Positions 7,300 through 42,933 of a stretch of DNA of 64,000 nucleotides are shown here, piece by piece. The notes under the pieces were generated by a model, which worked only from the letters and a program-made list of their open reading frames with translations, was not told the DNA's origin and did no database searches. The stretch covers positions 2,108,001 to 2,172,000 of the forward strand of contig MU008159.1 in assembly GCA_010909165.1 (NCBI GenBank), in the 5' to 3' direction. Position 1 is the first letter of the stretch, and the number at the start of each line of letters is the position of its first letter. This DNA comes from Anthoceros angustus (Eukaryota > Plantae > Anthocerotophyta). Made by a program: the position numbers and the translations under genes.

Positions 7300-8270
7300 G
7301 GTTGCGCCCCGCACTCTTCGGAAATGCGCAGTTGGGAATACTCTGAGTTTCCCTTGGCTTTCAGGTTATTTGGTGGCGGGATGGAAAAGGGGAAGTAGGT
7401 GGTCTGCTGATAAAGCCGGAGACCTCCTCAGAATGGTGAAAGCTTCTGCGGGTGCGTGTGTGCTGGAAGACCGGAATCGCATAGAGGGCATGGGTGACAT
7501 ACTCATTCAGTTTTGGGTGAGATTCTGTTTTTGGCAAGGGTTTAAGGAGTCCGCAGACTCTGCACTGTGCAGCATGGCCATTCTCGGTGCTCTGCAAGCA
7601 GTTCGGGGAGGGCTGCTGCTCTGGCATTGCTGCTCGGCAGGTGCATGCCCGAATGGTTGGTCCTACGAACGGATGGAACCTTCCTGCCATATGTACCATG
7701 TAGAAAGCCTGCCTTTCCAGCTTTGCATATGTAGGGCCATCCAAGTAAAGGCCGCTAAAAGTTTTCAATATTCAACAATGGTTTGAATGCCATGTTATGG
7801 CTATACTATAATCATATGAGTTAATATTATTATAAGTTATAATATTAATAGATAGATGACGTATATAGTATATGTCATATGATAGGTAGGTAGTGTGTTT
7901 GCATCCTCAAGTACTTGGTCATAAATTATATTTTATATCAATTTAGATATAATATAATATTTTATAAAATTTGAATATAGATCACTTCTCAACAATTTGG
8001 TACAATTTAGGTTTACCCCATCAATAGAGGTTATCATGGTGTAGATACTTACTTGCAAGTTGCAATCATATGGATGCATAGCACAGTAAAAACTTGCAAC
8101 CATCATGAATGTAGCAGAGTAAAGAATATAGACATTCGGACATGCTAAACTTAGTCTTTCACTTGTAAAATATATGGATATTTAAACAAGCTAAACTTGG
8201 TCTATTACTTATAAAGCATATCATTTATATCATCCCACTCCTATGAAAAAGAAATAAATTTAAGTTGTTG

Positions 8271-11200
8271 CTAGTCCTCATTCTGGCCTTCCTCTGCATC
8301 AAGCTTTTGAGGCAATTTGACAAGCTCGTATTCAAGCTGTTGAGGCATTAGAGATTTTCTCCAACCAGTTGCACCCGGTTGGGTAACCAAAATGGATCTT
8401 CTAGTAGGTGTTGGATTTGATAACTTTCTAGGCATTGATTGATTAAAGGAGGCCCTCGCGCTAGAACTGCCTGAACCACCAAGTGCATTCGTAGAGCTTC
8501 CATTGTTGAATGAACTACGCACACCATTAAAACCTTCTTGCATCATTGTGACAGATGGTTTTGAAAGATTAGACAATATTTCTCCTGCCTTTTCCGAACC
8601 TTCTTGGATAACTTGAATAGATTTTCTCGCTATTCTTGATACGGTTGTCATTGGTGATGGATTTACACCTGGATCATACCAAAAATACTGATTAATAAAT
8701 GGGGCATACATAATAAATTAAACTTAAAGAGATATTGAACATACCAAAACTAGCATCCGCTAAGTCCATGTCGTCTCCACTTCGTTGCCATACTTTAAAT
8801 GCTATAGTTGAAATAATCCCAAGCAAGGTTGCAGATCCTAGTGCGGAAGCAATTATGATAATATTTTTTTTGGAATTGATGTCGCTTTCTGGTGATGAGG
8901 AACCACTTCCTGGTGACGGGTTTATAAAGGCAGTTGCTAGTTTTTGGGTAATGTGTAAATCAGCAACCTTTCTACAAGTTCCGTTAACGTTTGAAACCCA
9001 TCCACTGGCACAATAACTACAATCAATGCCTGCATATCCTGCATAAACCGAAGACATAAATTGATATTAATTAATATTTATGAAGATGATATTATTTTGT
9101 GACAATTTATTGTATAGAGAAGGAGCTATACCCAAGAAGCAATCACATTGTCCACTTGCATCAAGACAATGTCCATTTGCAGCACATGCAATCCCTGTTT
9201 TTAGACCTGTGGTTGGTACTGGACATGGGTTTGGTACGTAAGGACAATCTTTTAAACAACAATATTGTTTGTCTGAACTTGCACTATTTCCTTGCTTATC
9301 ACATCTTTCCCCTTTTTCGCACATTCCATTTCCACAAAGGCCAAATCTTTGAATATTTATTACATCCGTAACTTGAATTGCGTCAAACATCTGTACCATG
9401 CTGATAATGATCTTAGGAAAAGAATTCTGTTAATTATTAATAAAAATAAAAAATAATTAAAATAAAAAATTAGAGTTTAAAATTTACATCATTGTCTTCA
9501 GACTCTAACAGAGTTGCTTGTATCAGTGAAGATCTTACGTCATTCTTTTTCACATGCATGTTTCTCAAAAAAGTCTATGAAGACAAAAAAAAAAAGTGAG
9601 TAAATATTAATCCTTAATATCTAAGTTTGATTATATATAATAATTTAATATAGTAAGCTCTTTGACTTCATATAATAGACTCTAGATTCATAGAAAATTG
9701 TCTTTAGAGGACTTTCACAAAATGTTTCTTCTTCCATGACAAGTAAATATTTAGTAGATGGTTCTTGAACATTGAATTATAATACTTTGAACTATCAAAG
9801 TAAAACCTACAATATTGTACCAGTGGAATTGGAAGAATTGTCAACTTAAAAACTCCTATGGACAAGGATGTTCCACCATTCATGCAGTTTTCCACAACTT
9901 CATTGTCAGAAGTACAATCCATGCTCAAACTATTGGAAATTTGCATTGAGTTCAACACCACTGCCGACGTCTGAATTCCTAGTCGAGAGGAAATCTAGCA
10001 ATTCATCAAAGCATAATACATCAAAATAGGGTAAATGAAATAGTATATATTATGTGTGCAGAAAATTAAGATTCACATGTTACATACACTTTGTACAAAA
10101 GATGTCATGAAGTCTTTCCAAATAGAGGATCCGTTTATTTGGAGAGACATTGTGGCATTTATAAATTCCGTAAGAATTGTCAAATTGGTTCCACAACTTG
10201 TACCATCTCCGTTGCAAATATGACATTCATCGAGGACACCACTCTGGCAACAAATTCCCTTTTCATCACGAATAGTAGGACAACATGTGTTTTGTGAATC
10301 CAGAGACCTGTATGCATGTAATAATTTTGTGCTTATATTGTAGCTGTTCATTTTTGAAGTGACCAATGAAGTATTCTATCTTGTATTAAAGGTTTAAAAA
10401 GAAATTCATACTTGGATTTCCCATCGCATACACCACAAGCATCTAGATTCCCACTCTCGCAACAAAATCCATTCTGCACAAGTTCATAAGGTAGATTTCA
10501 CTATGTTTTCTCAAATTATTTACGTATGTATTGGGTCTAAAGGAAGAATATTAAAGAAAATTTATCTAAGAGAATTCATACCCGATCAAGTTTTGAGGCA
10601 TTGTTTGTACAACAATGTTGATATGCATCTATGGTTTTAAACAGACAACAACTGACATTCCCATTTGGAAGATAACCCATTGGTTTCCCCTTACAGACTT
10701 TAGGTCTATCACAATATCGTCCTTCCCACTGCGATAAGCAAGTACATTGCCCTGCCTATATAGTCAAATCCATATATATGTTAAATTCATATAAAAGAGT
10801 AAAATATAATTAAACATTCTTTCCCATAAATGGTAAAAGTTTTTCAAGTTGATGGATATTGGTATAACTATTAGTAGCATAGAATTTTTCCTTACCAGAC
10901 ATTTCCCATTCCCAGAACAATTGTTGTAGTTGCAATTGTCACAATTTGGATCAACTTGTTCACAATTGGTTGATGAGGCTGGTTTTAACAATGGATCACA
11001 AAGTGACTCAACAACAGAATCTCCTTCTCCATCGACACACTAACAATATATTCACACAACAAAATCGTTGTTAATCCGTTAGACTAAATTATTCCAATCA
11101 TTTTTTAAGGGAAGAAAGAAAACAAATGTTTATTTTGTTACCTGAACAACACGGTAAACTGTAGCATTACACTCACTAGGGCATCTTGACCAATGACCGA

Positions 11201-14200
11201 CCAGCCAAGCATATGTTGCACAAGGCTGTAACACAAAAATATTATGGAAGGCTTTCTTCAGGGTCTATTTCTTGCAATTTGGCACTTTGATGTATACATA
11301 GAATTGGGATAAACAAGAGGGAACATGCATACTAAAAAATTAAAAAATATGATAAAACCTTAGACAGTAATATGTGTACCTGGTCATCAAAATGTGTACC
11401 TGGTCATTACATCGTGATTGCACTCTTGGAGGTTCACCACTACATAAGGTATCATCCACGATTGTATCATTTTGCATACAAATACTATCTCGAAATCGAA
11501 ATCCTCCAGCACAAGGCACGTTGCAAAAGTTCCAGTTTGGAACTTTCCAATATGTGCTATTGCATGCTTGTGGATTACAATGTCGAGTCTCAGTATCTAA
11601 AGTGACCTTTGAACACATAGAAATATCTGCTATATTTCCAAAATTGTCGACGCAAACCAATTCCCTGTGAATCCTAAAGTTAGGCTTTTGTTATATAGGA
11701 ATTTTGTGATATCGCTTAACAAAAAATGATTGCAAGTTTGATCCAATCATACAACCTGTTTTGAGTGCCAGAGCCACAAGTCTGGTTACACTCACTCCAA
11801 GGACCTTTAAACATCTTGTAAATTTGGCACGCCACATTATTGCAACTCTATTGAGAAAAAAAAAGGTACTATAAAGTAACTGATATAAAATTTTACAGTA
11901 TCAACACAAGCTTCATGATTATATCTCACTTGATTTAATTGCGGAATACTTAGATAGTCACAGAAACTTGCATTTACCGCCACAAAATCTTTATCGTAAC
12001 ATTGCATAAGTGCATGCTGCTCACAGTGATGTTCCAAAAGAAGGAAGATTAAATAGTTAACAGTCATATAAGATAATTTTTAAAAATGGTATAAAATAAA
12101 ATTACACATACACCTTATTTCCTCCCCCACATGGTTTGTCACATTGACTCCAACCAATAGGGCTCCAAGAATATTCAGATGTTGTATCTTGTACCAATAT
12201 TGGTGGTTGTGATTCCATCTCACAACTACTTGTAAATTTCCAGTTAGTACAAACAACTTCTGGCTCTGCTTGCATGGCAGTATGTATTTTTGAAGTAGAA
12301 TAAGCAGCAAACTTATTTGTTGATTTCCTTTTATCTAGACACAAATTTAGTGTTATCCAATTTTTGTTTTCATGTGATACGATGTATTTAGCACCAAACA
12401 AAAAATCCTTTCTATGAACTTAAAAAAACTATTAAAATTGGGCTACTACTGTATTCCATGAGGTGGTTCAATGGGGTAGTGCCTAAGTTTTGTCGGGTGA
12501 GGTATCAAAGTTTTTCATATAGAGTAAAACATAAGATTTTAAACTATGATGGATAACGGTGATGGATAATAGCTTACCATTTGGTCCTTTGACATAAATA
12601 TTGAATGCACCTTGATCTCCTCCGAAACCATCAACCATCTAATATTAAAGCAATAAAACCAAAATAAATATGAAGACATTTATGTGTGCGATGTGTCATT
12701 AATTATATCACAGCAGATGTACTTAAGCAATTTCATTTTTCATAATGGTTTATAATATAAGTTTTAAAACAAAAATATTCAACAGTTAAATATAGATAGA
12801 GCAAACAAATCTATGACACCAAAGTTCATCAATGTCTATCTAAGAACTCACAATTATATACACATGACCCTTCACAAATGAAATTTGTGGAATCATCGAT
12901 TGGGCATTACAAGCATCGTCGTTGCAAGCTAACTGATGCACAGTTTGAGTTGTTTTTTCATAAACTGATAATAATGTATCAAACTCTGTATCTCCACACA
13001 ACGAAATATTTACTACCTGTAAAGCAAGTTGATTGATTGATTCACAAAACTGTCCATAAGAGAACTAAAACTTTTCAGCCATTAGATAGGCACATTCAAA
13101 TTTCAAATTTGCATACTTCGACTAGATAAAATGCTCAAGTTAGATGGACTTGAGGCTATCTTCTATCATGGGTAGATTTGATACCTTAGGTGGAACAATA
13201 GTAATGAAAAATAGTTATATGTATCGAATGCTCAATCTAAGAAAATAATAACATAAGTGACATGATTCAAACTTAAACTAATGAATATGTACCATTGTTT
13301 CATCTGCAGTGAATTGAAATACAGTATCCGGTCCAGAACTATGACAAGAGTCAAAATCAGAATCATATATGTTGTTATAGTTTGATGTGTCGTCCACGTA
13401 GTAAAAGGGAAGACTTGGAATTATTTTTGGTTGTGCAATTGATTGACCGCAAGGATTATTAGGTGTCTGTCTACACACCGCTATCCATTGAAGAAAATAT
13501 AAAATCTTAGAAAGAGCATGTTATATAGTAGCATACATTTTTGCAGGTGAAAATTAAAACCTGTATCTATAGAAGTAAGAAAGCCTTCAGGAGTCACTAC
13601 GAACCGTCCATCAGTACTAGTAAATGCCCATCTAATCATTGCAGAATGATCTAAAAAATCTGTACCCACATGATAAAAGTTTATTATGTCAAATCAACCT
13701 TTTTGTGCTAGTGTTAGTATGTCAAATTGACCTGGTGTGGAAGTTCCCCTTCTGAACGTCTTATGATGTACATATAAAAACTAGACCAAGATTATGTTTC
13801 TATCTTTTTATAAAATTAATATAACACTGTAAGACAAGATATGTAATACTATCTAGTTCATGTACCAAAAATGATGCACCTGGAATAACGTAAAGAACCA
13901 AAGTAATAGTTTGTGTATCACTCCATCTTGCACTGGTCCCAAATGTTAATTGAGCTGGCTGAAACCGTCCTATGTGGCAAAACAATCAACTTAATTAGGA
14001 TTTCACTTCAATTGTATAATGTGCCTCCAAATCAAGTCAATCCATTTTTTCCCTTGCAACGAGGAAATATGAGTAATAATCCATGATTCTTTTAGTTTTC
14101 CTGTACAAATATTTAAATGCAAACAATAACTTAATCACATAAGTAAGTAACTTTCATATGATTTTTTTTAAAGGGATAGTACCTAGGGTATGATCACTTA

Positions 14201-16815
14201 ATGTAGGTGTAACGATGACATTAGCATTGGGTTTCACACGTAAGCTTATTGTAGCTGGTAATGAAGTGCCTTCGGATGCGTTATAAAATGAAGCTGGATG
14301 AATATCTACAAGTGGATCTTTGAAGTTCACATTCAAAAGCTTTCTTGAAGTATCAGGCTTTGTATTAGAAATAGCGTTTGACTCCGCAGCATCCATAATA
14401 GCTTTTCTAACCTCTGAAGGTCTTGCATCTGGATTTTTTTGCAAGTAAAGAGCTGATGCTCCAGCCTAGCATGATCAAACTTTTAAAACTAAAATGAGAG
14501 AACAATTCAAATGCAGGTTATTAACTGACAAGGAATTTATTTTACTAAGAAGACTTGTAGGGGCGTAGCAAAATAAATGTATCTATAATACATGTACATG
14601 TCTTTACATTATGTATTTAAGAACATAAATTCATATATAAAGTACAACAAAAAGTTAGAAGAACAAAATACCACGTGAGGACATGCCATTGAAGTTCCGG
14701 ATAGAATTGTGTAGGCCGTATCGCTGTCTTTATAGGAACTTACAATCAATTCTCCCTGTATATACCAAAGCAAAGTTTCTTCTTGTAGTATAAATTCAAC
14801 ATCACTTAAACTCAACAATTAGACCCCATCTATATAATCTAAATTATAATATTTTCAAGCGAGTCATAGATCAATTAGTCTTGTGGTTTTCATGGATATT
14901 TCCTTCTACATCTTGGATAGGTAGTCCTTAGATATATATCATAAATATTGATATATATTTTTATATATATTAATATATTTTTAATGATAATAATAATATA
15001 TGTTATCAATAGAATGACAAACTATACTTACAGGTGCAAAGATTGTCATACATGTTCCAAAGTTGGAGAACCAACTCATTGTGTTGGTTTTTGTTGAGGA
15101 CCCCACAGAAATCACTGAAGATGCTCGTGATGGTGAATAGTTACATGCAGCTTGGACAAAATTCCCCGATGCAGCAATCTGTGTGAATTGATTTTAAAAA
15201 ATTAAAAAATGAGTTTTGAGCATGATCAATATTAGTGGTCATTATGTTCTTAGAAGAAACTATTTTAGTGGAATAATCTTTTTTATATATCATAAGATTG
15301 GAAAAAGGGCAAGCACACAAAACACCCAGCTAATCTAACATTTATAAAAGAAAAAACTCTTACAGCGATTATTCCAGTGTGATTCACCAGGTTGTTGACT
15401 GCTTGATCAATACTTATGGAAGCTTGAGTGGCTATTGACATGGATACCACCGCAGGACGTATTTGATTTTTTCCTATCCATTCCAAAGCTGCCATAATTG
15501 CTCCATATCCTCCGCTTCCATCACACCCCATAGCCCGAACGGGATGTACAAAGGCATGTTTAGCAACTCCATTTCGTAATCCCACGGCAATTCCTAGATT
15601 CAACATTTTCAACATGAAACATGGAAGCAACAATATATTCTGTTCATATTTGATACGACGAAATATGTTTCACTCATTTCTTACATATGTTATCTAGACA
15701 TATTCATATAACGAAAAATGTATCTAACCTGCACAATGGGTCCCGTGTCCATTACAATCATTTGTGCCTTGGCCATCACCAATTCCATCAAATCCAGAGA
15801 GACATCTTCGCAAGGGTGTCCCACTCTTGTCTTTCCTACCATCTTGATAAAGGAATTCTTGATGAGAACATCTAATTCCCTACATATAATTATAATTATT
15901 ATTGAGTTATAATTATGTTGTTGCTTGTAATATCAAATACAGTGTTCATATATGTAAAGTACATACCGTGTCTAAAACATATATGTGTACACCTTCTCCA
16001 GTAGCTGTAACATTATAGAGCTGATCTAGATAACTCTCCCCAATTTGATGATCAATTCTATCAAGACCCCAATTAGCTGGGTTTTTTTGAACTACACCCG
16101 CAGCTAGTCTTAGAGTACCCTCAACTTCAACTTGATCAATCTCATCACCCTTCACATTTAATAATTGAACTAGATGTTCCCCACTAATTACTATTAACAT
16201 ACCAAGCCAAACTTTCTTAAATCTGCAAAGAGTTTAGTTTGTTCATTTGAAATTTTAAACAATATTTTTTATTTTTACTTCCTCATATATGAAGTAAGAG
16301 CTAATTTGAGGACTAATATAAAAAAATAAAATCTTGCCTTAGAAGAAAATTAAAAATATATAATGACAGTCAAAAACATACTTTTGAGAGCAATAGCCTG
16401 AGTATGTCGTATCAGCTTCGACTAGATTACATATGTCATCAACTTCACTAGAAGCTACTCCATTTTTCAGCCTTATGAGATAGCTACAAGAATATTTCAG
16501 CTATATATTTTAGCACATGTTTTTTTTCCCCCTCTTTGAACTTAAAAAACACAGATGCCATATTTTGCATTCAATCACAAACCTAGTTGGTGTTGTTTGC
16601 TGTTCAAGATTAGATTGATCATTGCCATCATTATACTTTGTTCCACAATTATAGAGCTTGGAACTTATACCCTTTCCCAGAGTACACTTGGTATAACCTC
16701 CTTGCACTAGACCAATATATCCAAATGTGATGGAGACAATTGTGAATGAGATGAGTGCAACTATGATTCTGAAAATTGTTGCACCACTCATTCCAACAAT
16801 AATAGTCTTAACCAT
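8271..16815 (-). CDS. Large membrane-anchored proteinase K-type (S8A) subtilase with I9-like prodomain, PPC-like domain, four TSP1-like repeats, Cys-rich/EGF-like repeats, TM helix and cytoplasmic tail; about 25 exons
   Basis: Catalytic triad motifs: [17 protein letters not shown] (Asp, ~15970-16080), [11 protein letters not shown] (His, ~15730-15765) and [10 protein letters not shown] (Ser, ~14672-14705), plus the oxyanion motif ASGN (~15165). TSP1-like [45 protein letters not shown] and [15 protein letters not shown] helix [22 protein letters not shown] (~8800-8870). Confidence 0.85.
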
Positions 16816-17702
16816 ATTCGTGTCATGTATAGCAATATAGGTGTTCCACGGAACATGCTTGACCCCTTAAATATCTTTTTATGGTTTTAGAGCTTCTTTG
16901 TTAAACCTTTCCATGTTGGCCCAAGTAGCTGCATATCCTACTTTATGGACCCAATCTTAATTGATTCCATACTAAAATGACCACATCATTGGTTTTAAAT
17001 CTTACTGAGCCAAGTAAGGTCTTGTATTTTGACTACCCAAATTTGACACTTCCATGAATTTCCAATATGCACATCAAATACTGTTGGTTCTACAATTTGG
17101 TGCAATAAAAACGTACCAGTCAACTCATTTGATTTGTGTTTTCCGATTATCAGTCTAAATGTTGATGAGAAAAGATTACTAAGCTCATTTCTCATCAACA
17201 TATGTCTCTCAACCATCAACTGGATTTAAACAACGTTATGTCATTCATGTAGTTAATTTAGCAGACAATGATGAAAAGCTCCTATATTGAAGAAAAATGA
17301 TAGTTTTGAGGTTTGTTCCTGCCTCTTTATTACAACTATTTAATATTTAGCATAAGTTATATTCAAAACCAACAAAATCTACCTCTTTTCATATGGGCTG
17401 CCTTGGTGGAGTGGTAGAGGCAAACCCACACTATTTTTCCTCAACAATAGGTACTCAGAGTCCTAAATCACATCTTGCTAGTAGTGGAAGGAGCTAGTAG
17501 GTATATAAAAGAACTAGTTGGGTTTGGTGCTATACTTTAGTACCTATGGATATTCAAACTTTACTTCACTTCACTTTTAAGCCATTGGATAAAAGGTTTT
17601 TCCCTTGAGCTTAATTTATAAAATCTAGATATAATTTTAATAAAAATATATTTTTTGTTAAATTTTCTTGTCCTTATTCAATGTATGTAATAAGGTATGA
17701 TA

Positions 17703-17765
17703 GAAGAAGAAAAATTCTATATTGAAGTCATTGATTTCATTTAAGTCACGGATTTCCGCCATGAA
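17703..17765 (-). repeat. Diverged copy A of the (GAA)n-tailed short element
   Basis: GAAGAAGAAAATT..TTTAAGTCACGGATTTCCGCCATG shares the tail and the hairpin core with copies B and C. Confidence 0.45.
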
Positions 17766-17980
17766 CTGGGCTCGGTACTGAAAACCGATACGTGTAGAGA
17801 GTAAACCGGCATGTGTAGAGCACTCATATGCTTTGGGCATTTGAGTATAGAGTCTACGCAGGTACCTATTTGCTTTCGTGGCAAAAGGGGTTGACTAGTT
17901 AATGTTTATTTTGTTGGTGTGGAACGGAAGATCGGTGCGTGCAGCGCTTTCCATCTTTGTGCCGCTGCGAGGAAGGTGAG

Positions 17981-19141
17981 ATGGATTCCAGTATGTCTGA
18001 GGAAATGCGGGAAGACTGCGTGCTTTTACTGTTGCTGAAGGCTGATCCGAAGCCTTCTCCAGAGAGAAGCGGGGAAATGGATCCAAATGTATGGAGCAGA
18101 CTTCCCGACAATTTGTTGGAGGAGGTGGTAAGACGACTGCAGACCCCATCATATTTCAGATTCCGCGCAGTCTCCAAACCGTGGGCAGCACTGCTCTCTT
18201 CTCCCGAGTTTCTGCGTCGCACCACAGCAGGCTGCCATCCGCCCCGCAGCCTGTCCATTTGTGGATCTGTAGTGAGCCTTTCTAAGGATGTGGTGAGACC
18301 TGGCAACGTTCGCAAACTCCGGCTCCCTTACTCTCCCAATCTTTACCCTTGCTGTACAGGGGGAGGGCTCATTTGCTTCCGCAGTACGTCGGTCAGTTTC
18401 CAGCTGCATGTTTGCAACCCTCTAATAAGGACATGGAGGCAACTGCCAGAGTATGAAACCCTGTATCACTGTGTCACCAGGACCACTTTGATTTTCGACA
18501 GGGATTTCAAGACATACAAGATTCAGGTCACATGTCGAAAGGAAGGAGCACATGAGAATGAGTGGGCCATTTGCATCTACGACTCTAGCCAAAATTCTTG
18601 GAAGACAGTGCCATTGCAACCATGCCGGGGCATGGAGTTTGCCCATGTGTTCTGCAACGGGATGATTTATTGTATTGACTCACAGTTGATGTTGTGGTCC
18701 CATGACATAGCCGAGGGGGTTTGGAGGCAACTCCCAGTTCGGCGGCCAGCAAATGTGTTTGAAAGGCATATTTCTCTTGAGGAGCACTGCGGGTCTCTTT
18801 TGCTGGTTGGCTTTCTAAGCAACTCTCTCACCAGCTATGCAATATGGAAGTTGGAGGAGACTCACGGGGCTTGGATTGAGGTGGCTGTGTTACACAAAGA
18901 GCAAATGATGGACCTCTTCGTTCCTTCTGCTGAGCGTGAACAATGCTGGAACTCCATATCATTGGGGGATTGTTTTTTCCTGCATATTTGGATCAGTGTC
19001 CCTAGAAGTCGCAGCAAGGGCATGTTAGTCTTCAACTTTGAGCAAAACATGTGGCTGGCTTGGGCGATTGATTTCGGAGAAAAGAGTACGAGTCTCCGAT
19101 TCTTTTATCCTTGCGATCCGAGGCTGGACCATGTTCCATGA
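17981..19141 (+). CDS. F-box protein (F-box/kelch-like C-terminus), intronless
   Basis: 400-aa ORF containing WSRLPDNLLEEVVRRL..FRFRAVSKPW (F-box), then GGLICF..VCNPLIRTWRQLP and YDSSQNSWK repeats. First in-frame ATG at 17981. Confidence 0.88.
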   Translation: MDSSMSEEMREDCVLLLLLKADPKPSPERSGEMDPNVWSRLPDNLLEEVVRRLQTPSYFRFRAVSKPWAALLSSPEFLRRTTAGCHPPRSLSICGSVVSLSKDVVRPGNVRKLRLPYSPNLYPCCTGGGLICFRSTSVSFQLHVCNPLIRTWRQLPEYETLYHCVTRTTLIFDRDFKTYKIQVTCRKEGAHENEWAICIYDSSQNSWKTVPLQPCRGMEFAHVFCNGMIYCIDSQLMLWSHDIAEGVWRQLPVRRPANVFERHISLEEHCGSLLLVGFLSNSLTSYAIWKLEETHGAWIEVAVLHKEQMMDLFVPSAEREQCWNSISLGDCFFLHIWISVPRSRSKGMLVFNFEQNMWLAWAIDFGEKSTSLRFFYPCDPRLDHVP

Positions 19142-32971: not shown

Positions 32972-35425
32972 GTGGCAAGGCGTAAGATTGCGGCGGAAGA
33001 GATTGAGAACTGGAGCAGATTGTGTGATAGACAGCTCAATGAGGCCGTGGATGTGCTGGACCGCTTGGTGCTGGGAGGTTCTCCTGTCCCTGACATTGTA
33101 TACTATCATGCCATCAAGGGATGCATTATAAACAGAGATCTGGTGGCTGGCAGGCGTGTTCATGCTCTTACTCATGAGAGTGGTAACGAGTCAAAGACAT
33201 ACGTGGCCAACAATGTCATACGGATGTATGCGTCTCTTGGAAGGTTGGGGGAAGCCATGCAGGTGTTCACCAAGTTGGCAGAACCAGACACCTTTTCATG
33301 GTTTTTCATTATTTTGGCCCACACTGACCATGGAAAGCCTGAAGAAGCTATAAAACTTTATCACGAGATGCGGCGCTCGACTGTTAAGCCAGACAACCAT
33401 ACTTTTGTGGCAGTCCTTAAGGCATGCTCCAGTCTTGCAGATTTGACATCCGGCACGCAGGTCCATGCTGATCTTTTGGGGAGTGTGGTGAAGCCGGATG
33501 TGTTTGTTGGCAATAGCTTGGTCGACATGTACGCCAAATGTGGCAAAGTGGAAGATGCTCGTGAAGTCTTTGACAAGATGCCGACAAAGAATGTGGTGAC
33601 TTGGAATGCGTTGCTTGGAGGCTATGTACAGCAGGGACTTGCTCAAGAAGCCCTTGCCCTTTATGCTTGTATGCAGGAGCAGGACATAACATCAGCCAAT
33701 CACCTCACGTTTGTGTGTTTGTTGAAAGCTTGTGCTAGCATTGGAGCCCTTCGAGAAGGGAAAGAGCTCCATGTTCAGATCCAGAAAGAGGGATTTGAAG
33801 CTGATGTTATGGTGGGCAGCAGCCTGGTGGACATGTATGCAAAATGTGGGAGCTTAAGTTGTGCCCGACAGGTGTTTGATATGCTGCCTACGAGAAATGT
33901 GGTGACCTGGACTGCCATGATTGCAGGATACGCCCAGCATGGGTTAAGTCAGGAAGCCATAGCCCTTTATGCAGAAATGCAGCAGGAGGGCCTCGCTGCA
34001 GGCAATCTTGCCACATTTGTTTCCCTGCTGAAGGCGTTCACAAACATTAGAGCTTTGCAACAGGGCAAGGATCTCCATCTGCAAATACAGAAAAGAGGGC
34101 TGGAGGGCAATATGGTTATCGGGAGTTGCCTGGTAGACATGTATGCAAGATGTGGTAGCCTAGATGATGCCCGCAGGTTGTTTGACAGATTGCCCTCAAG
34201 AGACATAGTGACATGGAATTCTATGATCTCTGGGTATGCAGAGCAGGGACTTGGCCAAGAAGCTCTTGATCTTTATCAAAGCATGCAACAGGAGTGCACG
34301 AGTACACCCAGTCAAGTGACGTACGTCTGCCTGCTCAAAGCATGTGCCAGTGTTGGAGCTCTAAACCTGGGTAAGCACATCCATTCAAAAATTCAACAAA
34401 GTTCAATTGAAACTGACCTGGTTGTCGGCAACTGCCTGGTGGACATGTACGGAAAATGTGGAAGCTTGGAGGATGCTCGCAAAGTGTTTGACAGATTGCC
34501 TAAAAAGGACGTGATCACATGGACTGCTCTTCTGAATGCTTATGGGCAACATAATGAAGGCTTAAGGGCCATGCAGTGCTTCAGAGAGATGCAGCAATCG
34601 GGGCTCATACCCAATGATGCCACTTTCACTTGTCTTCTCTGTGCATGCAGTCATGAAGGCCTGGTAATTGAGGGTCGGCGTTATTTCAAAATGATGGTTG
34701 AAGACTATGGCATTGCACCCACTGTTGACCAGTACAATTGCATGGTCGATCTTCTTGGGCGGTCAGGCTACCTTGATGATGCAGAGAATATGTTGCAGAC
34801 CATGCCATTGAAGACCGACGTTGTGGGGTGGAGATCTTTGCTAAATGCGTGTAAAATGTATGTTGATGTGGAGCGGGCAGAGCGGTGCTTCAAACATCTT
34901 GTGAAATTGGAACCCAAAGCAGCAGCATCTTACGTGCTCCTAGCAAACATCTACGCAAATGCTGGTAGGTGGAGGGATGCAGAGCGCGTCGAAAGCCTGC
35001 GGAAGTCAGTAGGTGCTGGCAAGAAGCCTGCAAAGGCCTGGATTGAGGTAAACAACGAAGTCCATGGCTTCGTCGTCGGGCAGGAAAGGGACGACATTTC
35101 TTCGAAGTTAAGGAGTGTGAATGACAGGTTAAAGGATGAAGGCGGCCACGTCCCACAAACGGAGTTGGTGCTGAAGCCGTTGTCTGACAGAGAGAAAGAA
35201 GATGCCCTGTGCGGACACGCGGAGAAACTAGCATTGGCTTACGGCCTTCTGAACACCCCAGACGGCACACCTCTGCTTGTCACAAAAAATCTTCGCATGT
35301 GCGACGACTGCCACACGGGGACGAAGACCATGTCAAGGACTGAACAGCGAGAGATCATAGTTCGAGATGCACACCGTGTCCACCGTTTTGTGAACGGGTT
35401 TTGTTCATGTGGAGACCGGCATTGA
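32972..35425 (+). CDS. PLS-class PPR protein with E1-E2 and DYW:KP-type deaminase-like domain ending in DRH; 5' end uncertain
   Basis: 17 PLS motifs (L-S-(P-L-S)x4-P2-L2-S2), E1, E2, then KKPAKAWIEV, HAEKLA, NLRMCDDCH and FCSCGDRH*. The ORF starts at a GTG just after a CAG acceptor, so an upstream exon is likely. Confidence 0.93.
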   Translation: MARRKIAAEEIENWSRLCDRQLNEAVDVLDRLVLGGSPVPDIVYYHAIKGCIINRDLVAGRRVHALTHESGNESKTYVANNVIRMYASLGRLGEAMQVFTKLAEPDTFSWFFIILAHTDHGKPEEAIKLYHEMRRSTVKPDNHTFVAVLKACSSLADLTSGTQVHADLLGSVVKPDVFVGNSLVDMYAKCGKVEDAREVFDKMPTKNVVTWNALLGGYVQQGLAQEALALYACMQEQDITSANHLTFVCLLKACASIGALREGKELHVQIQKEGFEADVMVGSSLVDMYAKCGSLSCARQVFDMLPTRNVVTWTAMIAGYAQHGLSQEAIALYAEMQQEGLAAGNLATFVSLLKAFTNIRALQQGKDLHLQIQKRGLEGNMVIGSCLVDMYARCGSLDDARRLFDRLPSRDIVTWNSMISGYAEQGLGQEALDLYQSMQQECTSTPSQVTYVCLLKACASVGALNLGKHIHSKIQQSSIETDLVVGNCLVDMYGKCGSLEDARKVFDRLPKKDVITWTALLNAYGQHNEGLRAMQCFREMQQSGLIPNDATFTCLLCACSHEGLVIEGRRYFKMMVEDYGIAPTVDQYNCMVDLLGRSGYLDDAENMLQTMPLKTDVVGWRSLLNACKMYVDVERAERCFKHLVKLEPKAAASYVLLANIYANAGRWRDAERVESLRKSVGAGKKPAKAWIEVNNEVHGFVVGQERDDISSKLRSVNDRLKDEGGHVPQTELVLKPLSDREKEDALCGHAEKLALAYGLLNTPDGTPLLVTKNLRMCDDCHTGTKTMSRTEQREIIVRDAHRVHRFVNGFCSCGDRH

Positions 35426-40500: not shown

Positions 40501-42563
40501 TTCGAGTCAAAACTGCAGCATGTTGTACAGCAGCATGTGACTGGAGAAGTGCTTCTACTTCTTCAAGCTGTATGCGCTGTCCATGAACCTTGACTAACCG
40601 ATCCTTTCTTCCAAGCAACGAGAAGTTGCCATCTGCCAGTAGAGTCACACGATCCCCTGTTTTGAACAAAGCACATTGTTCAGCAGAACCCTGAGACTGT
40701 GGGAACCAAGCATCCAAAAACTTTCTGTTGGTCTCCTGTGGGTCATTCAGATAGCCTAGGGCAACGCCACATCCAGCCACCCACAACTCTCCTTCTCCTG
40801 ATGTCACAACGGAGTCATTTTCAGAAACTACAAATGCCTGTAGTCCAGATATTGGCCTGCCAATGGGGACTGTAGACGTCTTCAATTGAGTGGCATGAAG
40901 TAAGCTGACCTCAAAGTAAGTACAGTCCCCAGACACCTGAAGGACAAAACCACGACAGAGACAAATCAGCAAAAGAGGTTAGCATACAAATCACATATTA
41001 CATCAGGTTGGAGTTATTTATGATGTCAAGAAGAGCACAGTCGATCTCACCTCTGTACTACCGTAAAGGTTGAGAATAGTTGTTGTCACCAAGAGCCGGT
41101 CAAGAGCTTGCCATAACCAGGTTTGCAATTGTTCCCCACTGAGCACTAGAATGCGTAAATTCAAAGCCGTTGACTCTTCTTGCAGTCGGGGCAAAAGTGC
41201 ATGCAAAAAGGATGGAACAGCAATCAGCCTCGTGATGTGATAGTCCTACAGCAAACCAGAAACTCAATGAGCAGTCAAAGCTACAACCACTGCCACGTTT
41301 GCAGCAAATGCTCTTGTACGCCAAGAGTTTACTGTTCAACCTTCAATACATCAAAAAGGATGAGGGGATTTCTTGATATCTGACTTCTTGGCGGAACAAC
41401 CAAAAGACTAGCAGTAAGCAGCGGGCCCAGTGCTTCGGTCAAATGATCCACAAAGGCAGTAGCAGTCTTAAAGCATCCCACATCCCCATCCAAATGTGGA
41501 TAACTATCTTCCATCCATCTCAACCGATTCATCAAACCTGCAACGCCGTAAGAAGGACATGCAGTACATGCTTAAAACGAAGGAACTCTGAATCCTTCAC
41601 AAAGTGACACAGCAGCAGCTTGGTTCTTGGATTGACACCTGTCTCCGTGCCACATACCCCCCTTGGGGTGCCTGTTGACCCTGATGTGTACATAACGTAC
41701 AAATATGAAGCCTTGCGTGAACTGCTAGGCCTTGCTGGACAAGTCTTTGCCTGCAAGCCCTTCACAAATCCCTCTTGCACCGAAAGCACTGGGCAAGAAA
41801 ACGTGCTGGCAATCTTTGTCACATCCATTCCATCTCTTTGGGGGGACCAAAACAAGTGGTGGCAACAAATGACCAGACATGGCTTGCAGCTAAGTGCCAC
41901 AGCTTCAAGTCTTTTTAGAGGCCAAGACAAGTCCAGTGGAACGAAGGCCGCCCCAATTTTCACAACAGACAAAAGACAAACCAGATACTCCGCCGAATTA
42001 ACCATCATAAGTCCAATCCTCCTCTCGCAATCTCCACTTTCAGAAGTGGCACGGTCTGCGCCTATTGCAATTCCAGGGGATTCGAGACGCGCATCACCTT
42101 CCCAACCTGTTCCTGCCCATCTAGAGGAATTCAGTTTAAGTCCCAATGCAGTCCAAGCCCATGAGCATGAAATTAGTGTTGCACCTAAACATGCGTCCTG
42201 CCTCAGCTGGCAATCAAGACCAAACGTACCCTCGAGTACAGCAGCAACGTCACAGCTTCTGCCCACAACATGCTCCAGAAGAGCTGCCAGCAAGTCAACA
42301 GCCAGAAGAAGTTCTCCATAGGTGTGCCCCACATCTGAGCTCCTGCAATTCACTCCTTCCGAAACTGCCAATGAGCACTCCAATCCATTACCGCCTGCTG
42401 AAGCTTCAGCCTTGGAACCAGCGGATGACTGCTGAGAGGCGTCTGTCGGAGAAGTAAAGCGAGTGGAGACATGCAGCACAGCAATCCTCTCCGAAAAGCG
42501 GGAAGCCACAGACTGGAAAGCATGCAGCAAAGACGGCTGCTCAGAACAACCAGCAATCGGCAT
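37521..42563 (-). CDS. AAE19: Acyl-activating enzyme 19 / AASDH (ACSF4)-like: adenylation + phosphopantetheine carrier + PQQ-type beta-propeller, multi-exon
   Basis: [14 protein letters not shown] (A3), [25 protein letters not shown] (A8), TSSGKVD (A10), carrier motif DFFALGGTS, and propeller repeats ending [23 protein letters not shown]. Confidence 0.88.
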
Positions 42564-42933
42564 GGAATCGGACTCCAACTTGCGTCCAGCTCCTTCTTAG
42601 CAAGCTCAATTCCATAACGCGAGCAGACTAAAGTCTGAACTTGAAACAGTTTCACTATGTACGTGAAGAAATTTAAACAAGCACGGTCTGGCAGCATGGA
42701 GTGCTGCCATCGCTGCCATGGAGTGCAGCTGCTGCCAGGCAGGAACGGTTTGCAGCTTGGATGTGTTGTGGTGCATGCAAAAGTGTGGCAGTCATCCCGA
42801 CTTCAGGCACAAGAGGTGGAACCAGGCCCTGTGGCTACATGGTGCTTGGGTGGATTCCCAAGATGCTCGGCTGCAGGTTGCAACCAGGGACATTCCTGGT
42901 TCTGTTTCTCCGTTCAACGCGTCTCCAAGGTAG

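What the first reader, a model, noticed from the sequence alone, without database searches (positions are those of the whole stretch)
8271..16815. Mosaic membrane-anchored proteinase K-type subtilase with ADAMTS-like TSP1 and Cys-rich modules in a land plant genome
Seen in sequence, by manual exon assembly on the minus strand: an N-terminal hydrophobic segment; an I9-like prodomain (YLIRLK..); an S8 domain with intact Asp/His/Ser motifs of the proteinase K/aqualysin style ([26 protein letters not shown]) and no PA-domain insertion; a PPC-like beta-sandwich ([42 protein letters not shown]); four TSP1-like repeats with C..D...V.D.LC spacers; D.C..C.G motifs ([23 protein letters not shown]) resembling the ADAMTS Cys-rich domain; EGF-like repeats; a TM helix; and a Ser-rich cytoplasmic tail. 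Established knowledge: typical land-plant subtilases are soluble pyrolysin-type SBTs with a PA domain, and TSP1 repeats are characteristic of animal and protist adhesion and matrix proteins. Inference: this is a cell-surface protease/adhesin, possibly retained for flagellated sperm, gamete release or matrix remodelling in seed-free plants, or acquired by ancient lateral transfer. It is the best candidate here for an undescribed system.
Basis: partly seen in the sequence, partly recalled or inferred. Interest (0 to 1): 0.85.

Follow-up and report, generated by a model that had tools for sequence, protein, structure and literature searches.

The report
Membrane-anchored subtilase with thrombospondin repeats
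This is a real, intact 26-exon plant gene for a membrane-anchored, proteinase-K-type serine protease carrying thrombospondin, EGF and other surface modules; it belongs to an old gene family already annotated but never studied in green algae, mosses, liverworts, lycophytes and ferns and not found in seed plants.

Summary
On the minus strand, 26 exons (25 GT-AG introns) join into one ORF of 1,510 aa from the ATG at 16815 to the stop at 8271. Domain order: signal/anchor, I9-like propeptide, proteinase-K/aqualysin-type S8 domain with intact Asp/His/Asn/Ser and no PA insert, Ig-like sandwich, PPC-fold domain, four ADAMTS-type TSP1 repeats, EGF, conserved CC...LD.C..C.G modules, a tentative SEA-like domain, EGF, TM helix, Ser-rich tail.

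It is not unique. Collinear orthologues occur in Klebsormidium (annotated "Subtilisin-related protease with thrombospondin repeats"), Closterium, Mesotaenium, Chara, liverworts, mosses, Diphasiastrum and ferns. No seed plant appeared in three searches. The gene tree follows the species tree, so descent is vertical; lateral transfer is not supported. The sperm link is weakened because unflagellated Zygnematophyceae keep the gene. Homology to the ADAMTS Cys-rich domain was not supported.

Unexplained: the whole locus is a sharply bounded AT-rich island (CDS GC 0.40, GC3 0.28) among plant genes of about 0.50 GC. A DNA contig bridges the left edge, and a related species holds the orthologue under purifying selection. 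No RNA evidence was obtained.

Verdict: new member of a known, functionally uncharacterised family. Earlier notes of this scan held no record of it.

The parts
8271..16815 (-). Whole coding region: 26 exons, 25 GT-AG introns of 76-394 nt, 1,510 aa. Exons: 16815-16583, 16483-16382, 16222-15967, 15879-15729, 15593-15364, 15178-15032, 14755-14672, 14465-14183, 13969-13880, 13659-13561, 13480-13293, 13016-12852, 12638-12578, 12265-12114, 12016-11930, 11847-11753, 11664-11400, 11225-11142, 11039-10896, 10755-10582, 10473-10412, 10307-10088, 9994-9821, 9426-9132, 9038-8745, 8668-8271.
   Evidence: Splice-site scoring plus alignment to orthologues. tblastn collinearity with the Marchantia and Calypogeia proteins. 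25 of 25 introns are GT-AG.
16705..16815 (-). N-terminal hydrophobic segment (aa 4-37), a signal peptide or signal anchor.
   Evidence: Kyte-Doolittle window. Several orthologues have shorter hydrophobic N-termini of signal-peptide length at the same place.
16096..16584 (-). I9-like propeptide (aa about 78-154, YLIRLK...TLRLAAG), spanning exons 1-3.
   Evidence: hhalign of the family propeptide alignment against propeptides of I9-bearing relatives: probability 88%, E 3e-6, 70 columns. No direct Pfam I9 hit.
14340..16074 (-). S8A catalytic domain of proteinase-K/aqualysin type (aa about 162-443). Asp196 lies in VLDTGI, which is split across the exon 3/4 junction (15978-15967 and 15879-15874). 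His242 lies in HGTHCAG, split across the exon 4/5 junction (15747-15729 and 15593-15592). Asn330 lies in AASGN (15161-15175). Ser395 lies in GTSMACPH (14675-14698). There is no PA insertion.
   Evidence: Pfam PF00082 pieces in profile order. Best solved relatives are 8c4z, 5wsl, aqualysin 4dzt and 2b6n. The four catalytic motifs are conserved in nearly all aligned orthologues.
13562..14339 (-). Ig-like (PapD/MSP-type) beta-sandwich, aa 444-558.
   Evidence: AlphaFold model of the orthologous Diphasiastrum region, pLDDT 87.8. VIA-align Z 10-11 to MSP/PapD-like domains.
12582..13561 (-). PPC / collagen-binding-domain-fold beta-sandwich, aa 559-695.
   Evidence: VIA-align Z 13.2 and 12.7 to ColG CBD, 11.8 to ColH CBD and 11.2 to the B. 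anthracis collagenase PPC domain; rmsd 2.1-3.1 A over 105-116 residues. No Pfam PPC hit.
10956..12176 (-). Four TSP1 repeats of ADAMTS type, aa 727-952.
   Evidence: PF19030 at 42.3 and 27.5 bits against a cut-off of 23.8 on exon pieces. Three to four stretches in orthologues. W..C..C..G pattern count.
10702..10943 (-). First EGF-like domain, aa 957-990.
   Evidence: EGF_Teneurin and EGF_2 hits at the homologous place in orthologues. The window piece alone gives only a weak hit.
10187..10656 (-). Three Cys-rich modules, aa 1006-1091: CC-x10-CC, then [15 protein letters not shown], then [27 protein letters not shown].
   Evidence: Invariant columns across nine orthologues. No Pfam family at E<=1 and no fold match.
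9334..10186 (-). Alpha/beta domain (beta-alpha-beta-beta-alpha-beta), tentatively SEA-like, aa 1092-1213.
   Evidence: Model of the Marchantia orthologue, about pLDDT 65-75 in this part. Top matches are Gpr126 ECR Z 9.1, MUC16 SEA Z 8.1 and 7.2, and TMPRSS6 Z 7.0. This is only suggestive.
8968..9336 (-). [12 protein letters not shown] motif, CC..DCPYV..CP module and second EGF-like domain, aa 1213-1304.
   Evidence: Weak EGF_2 hit on the window piece. EGF_Teneurin at 33.9 bits and EGF_laminin in orthologues. Conservation shown.
8797..8862 (-). Transmembrane helix, aa 1340-1361.
   Evidence: Hydropathy analysis; a TM helix lies at the same place in Marchantia, Riccia, Calypogeia, Physcomitrium and Klebsormidium orthologues.
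8271..8796 (-). Cytoplasmic tail of 149 aa (14.7% Ser) with an RKSLMP motif (8343-8360) shared with liverwort orthologues, then the stop codon.
   Evidence: Alignment and composition.
7800..17790 (.). AT-rich compositional island that contains the gene and its flanks.
   Evidence: GC 0.27-0.40 against 0.47-0.60 outside. CDS GC 0.399, GC3 0.281 and introns 0.272, against neighbouring ORFs at GC about 0.50 and GC3 0.47-0.56. The left edge is bridged by a DNA contig.

Best explanation
The locus is an intact, vertically inherited gene of a seed-free land plant. The gene encodes a type-I membrane-anchored subtilase of the proteinase-K/aqualysin (S8A) type.

Shown: the 26-exon ORF; the domain order (signal/anchor, I9-like propeptide, S8 with a complete Asp/His/Asn/Ser set, Ig-like domain, PPC-fold domain, four TSRs, EGF, Cys-rich modules, alpha/beta domain, EGF, TM, tail); and membership of a streptophyte-wide orthologue family that was not found in seed plants.

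Inferred mechanism: the protein enters the secretory pathway. The propeptide acts as folding chaperone and inhibitor and is cut off autocatalytically, which also frees the enzyme from any N-terminal anchor. The active protease then stays tethered by its C-terminal helix at the plasma membrane/cell wall interface or in an endomembrane compartment. The long ancillary stalk positions the enzyme and selects its extracellular matrix or wall substrates, as ancillary domains do in ADAMTS enzymes. That similarity would be convergence, because the catalytic class differs. The conserved Ser-rich tail (RKSLMP) would serve sorting or regulation. Substrates and biological role are unknown.
For: - Gene model and ORF.
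- S8 identity and subfamily.
- Catalytic residues conserved across orthologues.
- Propeptide.
- Ig-like and PPC folds.
- TSRs. EGF. TM and tail conservation.
- Orthologues with the same architecture in Marchantia, Riccia, Calypogeia, Physcomitrium, Sphagnum, Klebsormidium and Closterium.
- Monophyly of the family and a topology like the species tree.
- Purifying selection against a related species: 12 synonymous to 5 nonsynonymous among the listed exon differences.
- The island edge is bridged by a DNA contig, and the plant-specific F-box/DUF295 gene starts about 150 bp beyond the right edge.
Against: - No transcript evidence for this copy. The only putative RNA contig lies on the flank at 7400-7643.
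- The locus composition (GC3 0.28) is unlike its neighbours and unlike the 53% mean reported for A. angustus genes (PMC7027989). This is unexplained.
- The assembled protein could not be sent to the remote tools, so the fold assignments rest on orthologues.
- The functional mechanism is inference from domain content. No member of the family has been studied.
- The N-terminal hydrophobic stretch is long for a cleavable signal peptide.
- Fern models stop after the PPC domain, so the TSR half may not be universal in the family.
Confidence: 0.65

Rival explanations
1. The AT-rich island is foreign DNA. It would be either a contaminant or chimeric join in the assembly, or a lateral acquisition of a whole intron-bearing gene from a low-GC eukaryote, for example another seed-free plant.
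For: The 10-kb island has sharp edges and GC 0.33 against about 0.50. GC3 is 0.28 against 0.47-0.56 in neighbouring genes. It is the only such stretch in 64 kb. In the tree the protein sits beside vascular plants rather than with other bryophytes (90/93 support), and bryophyte monophyly has AU p = 0.046.
Against: A 2,983-nt DNA contig runs across the left edge. A related species holds the orthologue at 90-95% identity with part of the introns replaced by unlike sequence. There are no terminal repeats or target-site duplications. The protein is not nested in any sampled lineage: best identity is 61% over the N-terminal 620 columns. The AU result is borderline and the clade was named after the tree had been seen. 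The family is vertically distributed. Another AT-rich gene among GC-rich neighbours was noted elsewhere in this genome (unchecked).
Confidence: 0.1
2. The copy is a silent relic, an unexpressed or decaying gene, rather than a working protease gene.
For: No RNA contig lies on the gene in the one putative RNA run available. AT-rich, CpG-poor composition (CpG o/e 0.43) can accompany silenced chromatin. The end branch is rather long, 0.42.
Against: There are 4.5 kb of coding sequence in 26 exons without a single stop or frame break. All catalytic residues and most invariant cysteines are kept. Listed exon differences to the related species are 12 synonymous to 5 nonsynonymous. The RNA run held only 2% of the sampled words and consists of contigs, so absence means little.
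Confidence: 0.1
3. The protein is chiefly an adhesion or recognition molecule of gametes (motile sperm, gamete release), with the protease domain serving shedding or activation.
For: TSR/EGF/TM architecture is typical of adhesion proteins in animals and apicomplexans (established knowledge). The family was found only in plants and algae outside the seed plants.
Against: Closterium and Mesotaenium are Zygnematophyceae, which have no flagellated cells at all by established knowledge, and they keep the gene. No expression data were available. The catalytic site is conserved in nearly all members, which argues that proteolysis is central.
Confidence: 0.12

Closest known systems
Streptophyte 'subtilisin-related protease with thrombospondin repeats' family: Klebsormidium nitens P0162/P0164; Marchantia polymorpha Mp3g13090 (P0156) and OAE28250 (P0005); Riccia; Calypogeia; Physcomitrium patens (P0159); Sphagnum; Closterium.
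   Same: The same domain order holds from the N-terminus to the TM helix. The window protein aligns in one HSP over about 1,200-1,340 residues at 39-48% identity. It shares the catalytic motifs, Cys-rich modules, CGNGxCExGERC motif and tail motif, and the family forms one clade.
   Different: This copy sits on its own deep embryophyte branch and in an AT-rich island. It was not among the proteins returned by the protein searches. None of the family has a published function in the library searched.
Bacterial proteinase-K/aqualysin-type S8A subtilases with an I9 propeptide and C-terminal beta-sandwich or PPC domains (aqualysin-1 4dzt, 8c4z, keratinase 5wsl, Tk-SP 3afg).
   Same: The catalytic domain is about 44-49% identical by BLASTP to the nearest prokaryotic relatives identified, and bacterial proteinase-K/aqualysin-type enzymes are the best PDB matches. 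An I9-type propeptide and a PPC-fold domain follow the same order.
   Different: The bacterial enzymes are soluble and secreted. They have no TSR, EGF or Cys-rich stalk, no TM helix and no introns.
ADAMTS proteases (animal).
   Same: The logic of the architecture is the same: a zymogen protease followed by TSP1 repeats of the ADAMTS subtype (PF19030) and Cys-rich parts carrying a D.C..C.G motif.
   Different: The catalytic class differs (M12B metalloprotease against S8 serine protease). ADAMTS are secreted and not membrane-anchored. No ADAMTS Cys-rich or spacer domain was detected. This is an analogy and not membership.
Type-I membrane-anchored subtilases: plant S1P/SBT6.1, furin/kexin, Plasmodium SUB2 (from established knowledge).
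   Same: A propeptide-activated S8 ectodomain tethered by a C-terminal TM helix with a cytosolic tail.
   Different: They belong to other S8 subfamilies (SKI-1 or kexin with a P domain), have different ancillary domains and are not specifically related in the searches here.
Ordinary land-plant subtilases SBT1-5 (pyrolysin type, e.g. tomato SBT3, 3i6s).
   Same: The S8 fold and a C-terminal Fn3/Ig-like sandwich (SBT3 matches the Ig-like domain at Z 8.8).
   Different: The window protein has no PA-domain insertion between His and Ser (153 residues here). It belongs to a different S8A cluster and has TSR/EGF/TM parts. Xu et al. 2019 (PMC6713707) place the proteinase-K cluster apart from SBT1-7.

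Membership tests
Peptidase S8A, proteinase-K/aqualysin subfamily | Asp-His-Ser triad in subtilisin order with the oxyanion Asn | tested here: met
   D196 (VLDTGI), H242 (HGTHCAG), N330 (AASGN) and S395 (GTSMACPH), conserved in nearly all aligned orthologues.
Peptidase S8A, proteinase-K/aqualysin subfamily | Sequence closest to proteinase-K/aqualysin-type enzymes rather than pyrolysin, kexin or SKI-1 types | tested here: met
   The best PDB matches are 8c4z, 5wsl, 4dzt, 8c4x and 2b6n. Pfam PF00082 pieces are collinear. The mature N-terminus motif WGLDRID is as in aqualysin.
Peptidase inhibitor I9 propeptide | N-terminal propeptide homologous to PF05922 | tested here: inconclusive
   hhalign against propeptides of I9-bearing relatives gives probability 88% and E 3e-6. 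There is no direct Pfam hit at E<=1 on Marchantia residues 1-180 or at E<=0.1 on the window exon pieces.
PPC (pre-peptidase C-terminal) / collagenase collagen-binding domain superfamily | Beta-sandwich fold of the PPC/CBD type following the protease domain | tested here: met
   Z 11.2-13.2 and rmsd 2.1-3.1 A over 105-116 residues to ColG/ColH CBD and the B. anthracis PPC domain. The model is of the orthologous Diphasiastrum region, pLDDT 87.8. Sequence-level Pfam PPC is not met.
TSP1 repeat (ADAMTS subtype, PF19030) | Score above Pfam's gathering threshold, with repeated units | tested here: met
   42.3 and 27.5 bits against 23.8 on two exon pieces. Orthologues give 73.9-96.5 bits with 2-4 stretches. 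Four units were counted by pattern.
ADAMTS protease family | Reprolysin (M12B) metalloprotease and disintegrin-like domains | tested here: not met
   No such Pfam hit anywhere in the window pieces or the orthologues. The catalytic domain is S8.
ADAMTS protease family | ADAMTS Cys-rich and spacer domains | tested here: not met
   No ADAMTS_CR or spacer family at E<=1 in three orthologue C-terminal regions. No ADAMTS chain among the Foldseek or VIA-align matches. Only the short D.C..C.G motif is shared.
EGF-like domains | Pfam EGF family above threshold | tested here: met
   EGF_Teneurin 33.9 bits (cut-off 24.3), EGF_laminin 27.8 (21) and EGF_2 30.4 (22.1) at homologous places in orthologues. 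The window pieces alone are below threshold.
SEA domain | Ferredoxin-like alpha/beta fold next to the membrane, often with a G/SVVV autocleavage site | tested here: inconclusive
   The top structural matches are SEA-containing chains at Z 7-9.1, but the model confidence is middling and such Z values are common. No Pfam SEA hit. No GSVVV motif was seen.
Land-plant SBT1-5 (pyrolysin-type subtilases) | PA-domain insertion between the catalytic His and Ser | tested here: not met
   His242 to Ser395 is 153 residues with no insertion. No PA Pfam hit. The nearest relatives are green-algal, echinoderm and bacterial proteinase-K-type S8 proteins and not SBTs.
Streptophyte S8-TSR membrane protease family | End-to-end collinear homology and placement inside the family clade | tested here: met
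   Single HSPs over 1,200-1,340 residues. Family clade at SH-aLRT 99; embryophyte clade at 100/99.

The most novel reading that the evidence does not exclude
Streptophytes evolved, independently of animals, an ADAMTS-like solution. It is a zymogen protease (serine rather than metallo) fused to TSP1, EGF, Cys-rich and SEA-like modules and tethered to the membrane. It remodels or senses the extracellular matrix or wall, was present in the algal ancestors of land plants, and was lost in seed plants. The hornwort copy also lies in a gene-sized AT-rich island, which points to a special chromatin or mutational regime, or to an old plant-to-plant transfer, at this locus.
Probability: 0.25. Interest if true: 0.65.

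Novelty: new member of a known kind. Interest (0 to 1): 0.4.

Why it matters
TSP1 repeats and ADAMTS-style protease architectures are usually treated as animal and protist inventions. This family shows that a comparable design has been conserved from Klebsormidium to ferns and then apparently dropped in seed plants. It also corrects the statement in PMC6713707 that proteinase-K-type S8 genes are absent from vascular plants, because Ceratopteris, Adiantum and Diphasiastrum have them. The family has tractable members in Marchantia and Physcomitrium, so its role at the membrane/wall interface could be tested directly. The finding itself adds one more member, probably from a hornwort, plus an unexplained compositional island. 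It does not add a new kind of system.

Tried and rejected
- **Contaminant or chimera:** rejected. A DNA contig bridges 7400-8084, a related species holds the orthologue, and plant-specific genes flank the island.
- **Mobile element insertion:** no LTRs, TIRs, TSDs or tRNA genes at the island edges.
- **RNA support:** the single read-laying run showed the putative RNA contig only on the left flank, so nothing can be said about expression.
- **X1 differences:** they include adjacent double changes, many gaps and one apparent stop. I read them as noise in contigs from an error-prone run and did not interpret them.
- **ADAMTS Cys-rich homology:** no Pfam or fold support.
- **Cys-rich modules in the ESM Atlas:** no usable hit by features or by shape.
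- **C-terminal ancillary region as query:** it found only family members.
- **TSP1 exons downstream of the fern model:** none within 10 kb, but fern introns reach 27 kb, so this is unresolved. The Diphasiastrum gene spans 173 kb and no DNA was returned.
- **Host identity by exact look-up of a PPR ORF:** not on record.
- **Literature:** no paper in the library joins thrombospondin repeats with these plant proteases.
- **Tool limit:** the assembled 1,510-aa protein has no reference, so it was analysed only in local scripts. Remote tools received exon pieces or orthologues.

Full report
**1. Observation**

Pfam scans of these segments, given by reference, find Peptidase_S8 in four of them in profile order (positions 45-62, 147-204, 218-246, 247-276). 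They also find TSP1_ADAMTS above its gathering score in two (42.3 and 27.5 bits against 23.8), plus weak EGF hits.

I scored all frame-compatible GT..AG pairs between neighbouring segments and re-scored them with alignment to orthologues. The final model has 26 exons and 25 GT-AG introns of 76-394 nt. It gives one ORF of 1,510 aa from the ATG at 16815 to the stop at 8271-8273.

The longer exon 20 (ending at 10582) is preferred because it restores a CC-x10-CC module present in the orthologue consensus. The start of exon 14 and the exon 23/24 boundaries remain ambiguous.

**2. Anatomy** (residue numbers of the 1,510-aa model)

- Hydrophobic N-terminus, aa 4-37.
- Conserved Y..C.LGKG..LYNC motif.
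- Propeptide, aa 78-154.
- S8 domain with D196, H242, N330 and S395. There are 153 residues between His and Ser, so there is no PA insert.
- Ig-like sandwich, aa 444-558.
- PPC-fold sandwich, aa 559-695.
- Four TSRs, aa 727-952.
- EGF, aa 957-990.
- Three Cys-rich modules, aa 1006-1091.
- Alpha/beta domain, aa 1092-1213.
- [12 protein letters not shown] motif, a CC..DCPYV..CP module and a second EGF, up to aa 1304.
- TM helix, aa 1340-1361.
- A 149-aa tail with 14.7% Ser and an RKSLMP motif.

The S8 exons match aqualysin-type and proteinase-K-type solved enzymes best: 8c4z at 5e-15, 5wsl, 4dzt and 2b6n.

The propeptide gives no Pfam I9 hit. A profile of the family's propeptide does align to propeptides of I9-bearing relatives, with hhalign probability 88% and E 3e-6.

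The assembled protein has no reference, so I folded orthologue regions instead. The Diphasiastrum region after S8 folds at pLDDT 87.8 into two sandwiches. The second matches clostridial collagenase collagen-binding and PPC domains at Z 11.2-13.2. The first matches PapD/MSP-like domains at Z 10-11.

The Marchantia region after the TSRs folds less well, at pLDDT 65.6. Its alpha/beta core has SEA-containing chains as top matches at Z 7-9.1, which is only suggestive. The Cys-rich modules match no Pfam family at E<=1 and no solved fold, ADAMTS included.

**3. Relatives**

An exhaustive phmmer search with the S8 core exon found 14 hits from 4.5e-30 to 2.4e-14 at 49-71% identity, clearly separated from a mass of about 45% hits. 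The named members of this group are from Marchantia, Calypogeia, Ceratopteris, Ceratodon, Mesotaenium, Closterium and Chara. The long ones carry S8 plus 2-4 TSP1_ADAMTS repeats, and one also carries EGF.

A search with the Marchantia protein added Mp3g13090, two Riccia species, Physcomitrium, Sphagnum, Diphasiastrum, another Closterium, and two Klebsormidium proteins that their source names "Subtilisin-related protease with thrombospondin repeats". A search with the fern protein added a second Ceratopteris paralogue and Adiantum.

In all three searches the next-best hits are echinoderm, green-algal or bacterial S8 domains without TSRs (identities of some checked). No seed plant appears. The window protein aligns with the long orthologues in a single HSP over 1,200-1,340 residues at 39-48% identity. 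The catalytic motifs, most cysteines, the TM helix and the tail motif are conserved.

**4. Origin**

In an S8 tree of 67 sequences the streptophyte proteins form one clade (SH-aLRT 99), with land plants inside it (99). The weakly supported neighbours are Cymbomonas, Asterochloris and echinoderm proteins.

A careful tree on 623 columns recovers liverworts (100/100), mosses (97/96) and vascular plants (95/90). It places the window protein as a lone branch beside the vascular clade (90/93). Forcing it together with liverworts and mosses costs 6.8 log-likelihood units, AU p = 0.046. That is borderline, and the group was named after the tree had been seen.

The protein is not nested in any sampled lineage, and its best identity is 61% over those columns. 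This is what a deep embryophyte lineage such as a hornwort would give under vertical descent.

Host identity rests on three things:
- a plant-specific F-box/KIB1-4 gene starting about 150 bp beyond the island's right edge, and PPR-DYW genes further on;
- a first-reader note of a DYW:KP domain in this window;
- an earlier follow-up note naming Anthoceros angustus.

I could not verify the species myself.

**5. The compositional island**

GC drops from about 0.50 to about 0.33 between 7800 and 17790, with sharp edges. CDS GC is 0.399, GC3 is 0.281 and introns are 0.272. Four neighbouring ORFs have GC about 0.50 and GC3 0.47-0.56. Zhang et al. 2020 give 53.26% as the mean for non-HGT genes of A. 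angustus (PMC7027989).

The island is not an assembly artefact. A 2,983-nt DNA contig of organism A covers 7400-8084 without a break. A contig of a second organism matches 10994-12030 at 90-95% identity, with part of the two introns it crosses replaced by unlike sequence. Of the listed differences to that species that fall in exons, 12 are synonymous and 5 are not. There are no terminal repeats.

I have no tested explanation. Another AT-rich gene among GC-rich neighbours was noted elsewhere in this genome (unchecked), so it may be a recurring feature.

**6. Expression**

The single reads call found the one putative RNA contig only on the left flank (7400-7643), and none on the gene. That run held 2% of the sampled words and consists of contigs, so this says little either way.

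**7. Mechanism**

Shown: an intact gene whose product has everything needed for a propeptide-activated S8 protease, a long modular ectodomain, one C-terminal TM helix and a conserved tail.

Inferred: secretory entry, autocatalytic propeptide removal, tethering at the membrane/wall interface or in an endomembrane compartment, and substrate selection by the PPC/TSR/EGF/Cys-rich stalk. This parallels ADAMTS enzymes, membrane-anchored subtilases (S1P, furin, SUB2) and SEA-bearing membrane serine proteases. These are resemblances in working logic and not memberships.

**8. Literature and novelty**

Xu et al. 2019 (PMC6713707) report a proteinase-K cluster in Archaeplastida that includes Marchantia and Physcomitrella "but not in vascular plants". 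They do not mention thrombospondin repeats. The fern and lycophyte members found here contradict the "not in vascular plants" part.

Five further searches found no paper that treats the architecture or any member. The family is therefore annotated but functionally unstudied. This locus is a new member of it, interesting mainly as a pointer to the family and for its odd composition.

Fern gene models end right after the PPC domain, at 689-728 aa. With 84-kb genes I could not tell whether the TSR half is missing or lies further downstream.

Noticed in passing
window 7800-17790: The gene and its flanks form a sharply bounded AT-rich island (GC about 0.33, GC3 0.28, CpG o/e 0.43) among plant genes of about 0.50 GC. 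It is the only such stretch in the 64-kb window and its cause is unknown.
   Followed up: partly
window 17939-19141 (+): An intronless ORF of 400 aa with an F-box and a KIB1-4/DUF295-type beta-propeller starts about 150 bp beyond the island's right edge.
   Followed up: partly
window 32972-35425 (+) and 42934-45615 (+): Two long intronless PPR genes. The first has E and DYW deaminase domains and the second has an E motif only. The first is the subject of another first-reader note (DYW:KP).
   Followed up: no
window 41532-42578 (-): An ORF fragment with an AMP-binding enzyme domain, probably one exon of a multi-exon host gene with normal GC (0.51).
   Followed up: no
window 7400-7643: A 1,841-nt contig of the putative RNA run ends at 7643 and extends leftwards beyond 7400. 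A transcribed unit therefore seems to end just outside the island's left edge.
   Followed up: no
L001 (Ceratopteris richardii CM035416.1), gene at 10001-93945: The fern orthologue spans 84 kb, with gaps of up to about 30 kb between matched exons. All three fern models (689-728 aa) stop after the PPC domain. No TSP1 exon was seen in the 10 kb downstream, so ferns may have a shortened protein or split annotation. The Diphasiastrum gene spans 173 kb.
   Followed up: partly
P0011 (Chara braunii GBG84564.1): The Chara gene model fuses a retrotransposon polyprotein (zf-CCHC, RNase H, RT) to the S8 domain of this family. This is most likely an annotation merger.
   Followed up: no
window 8343-8360 (aa 1482-1487): The cytoplasmic tail motif RKSLMP is shared with liverwort orthologues, and Klebsormidium has RKSDNP at the same place. 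It may be a sorting or phosphorylation signal.
   Followed up: no
window 8089-12922 (run X1 contigs): The organism A DNA contigs differ from the window by many small gaps and adjacent double substitutions, including an apparent stop at 8889. The pattern looks like sequencing noise rather than alleles.
   Followed up: partly
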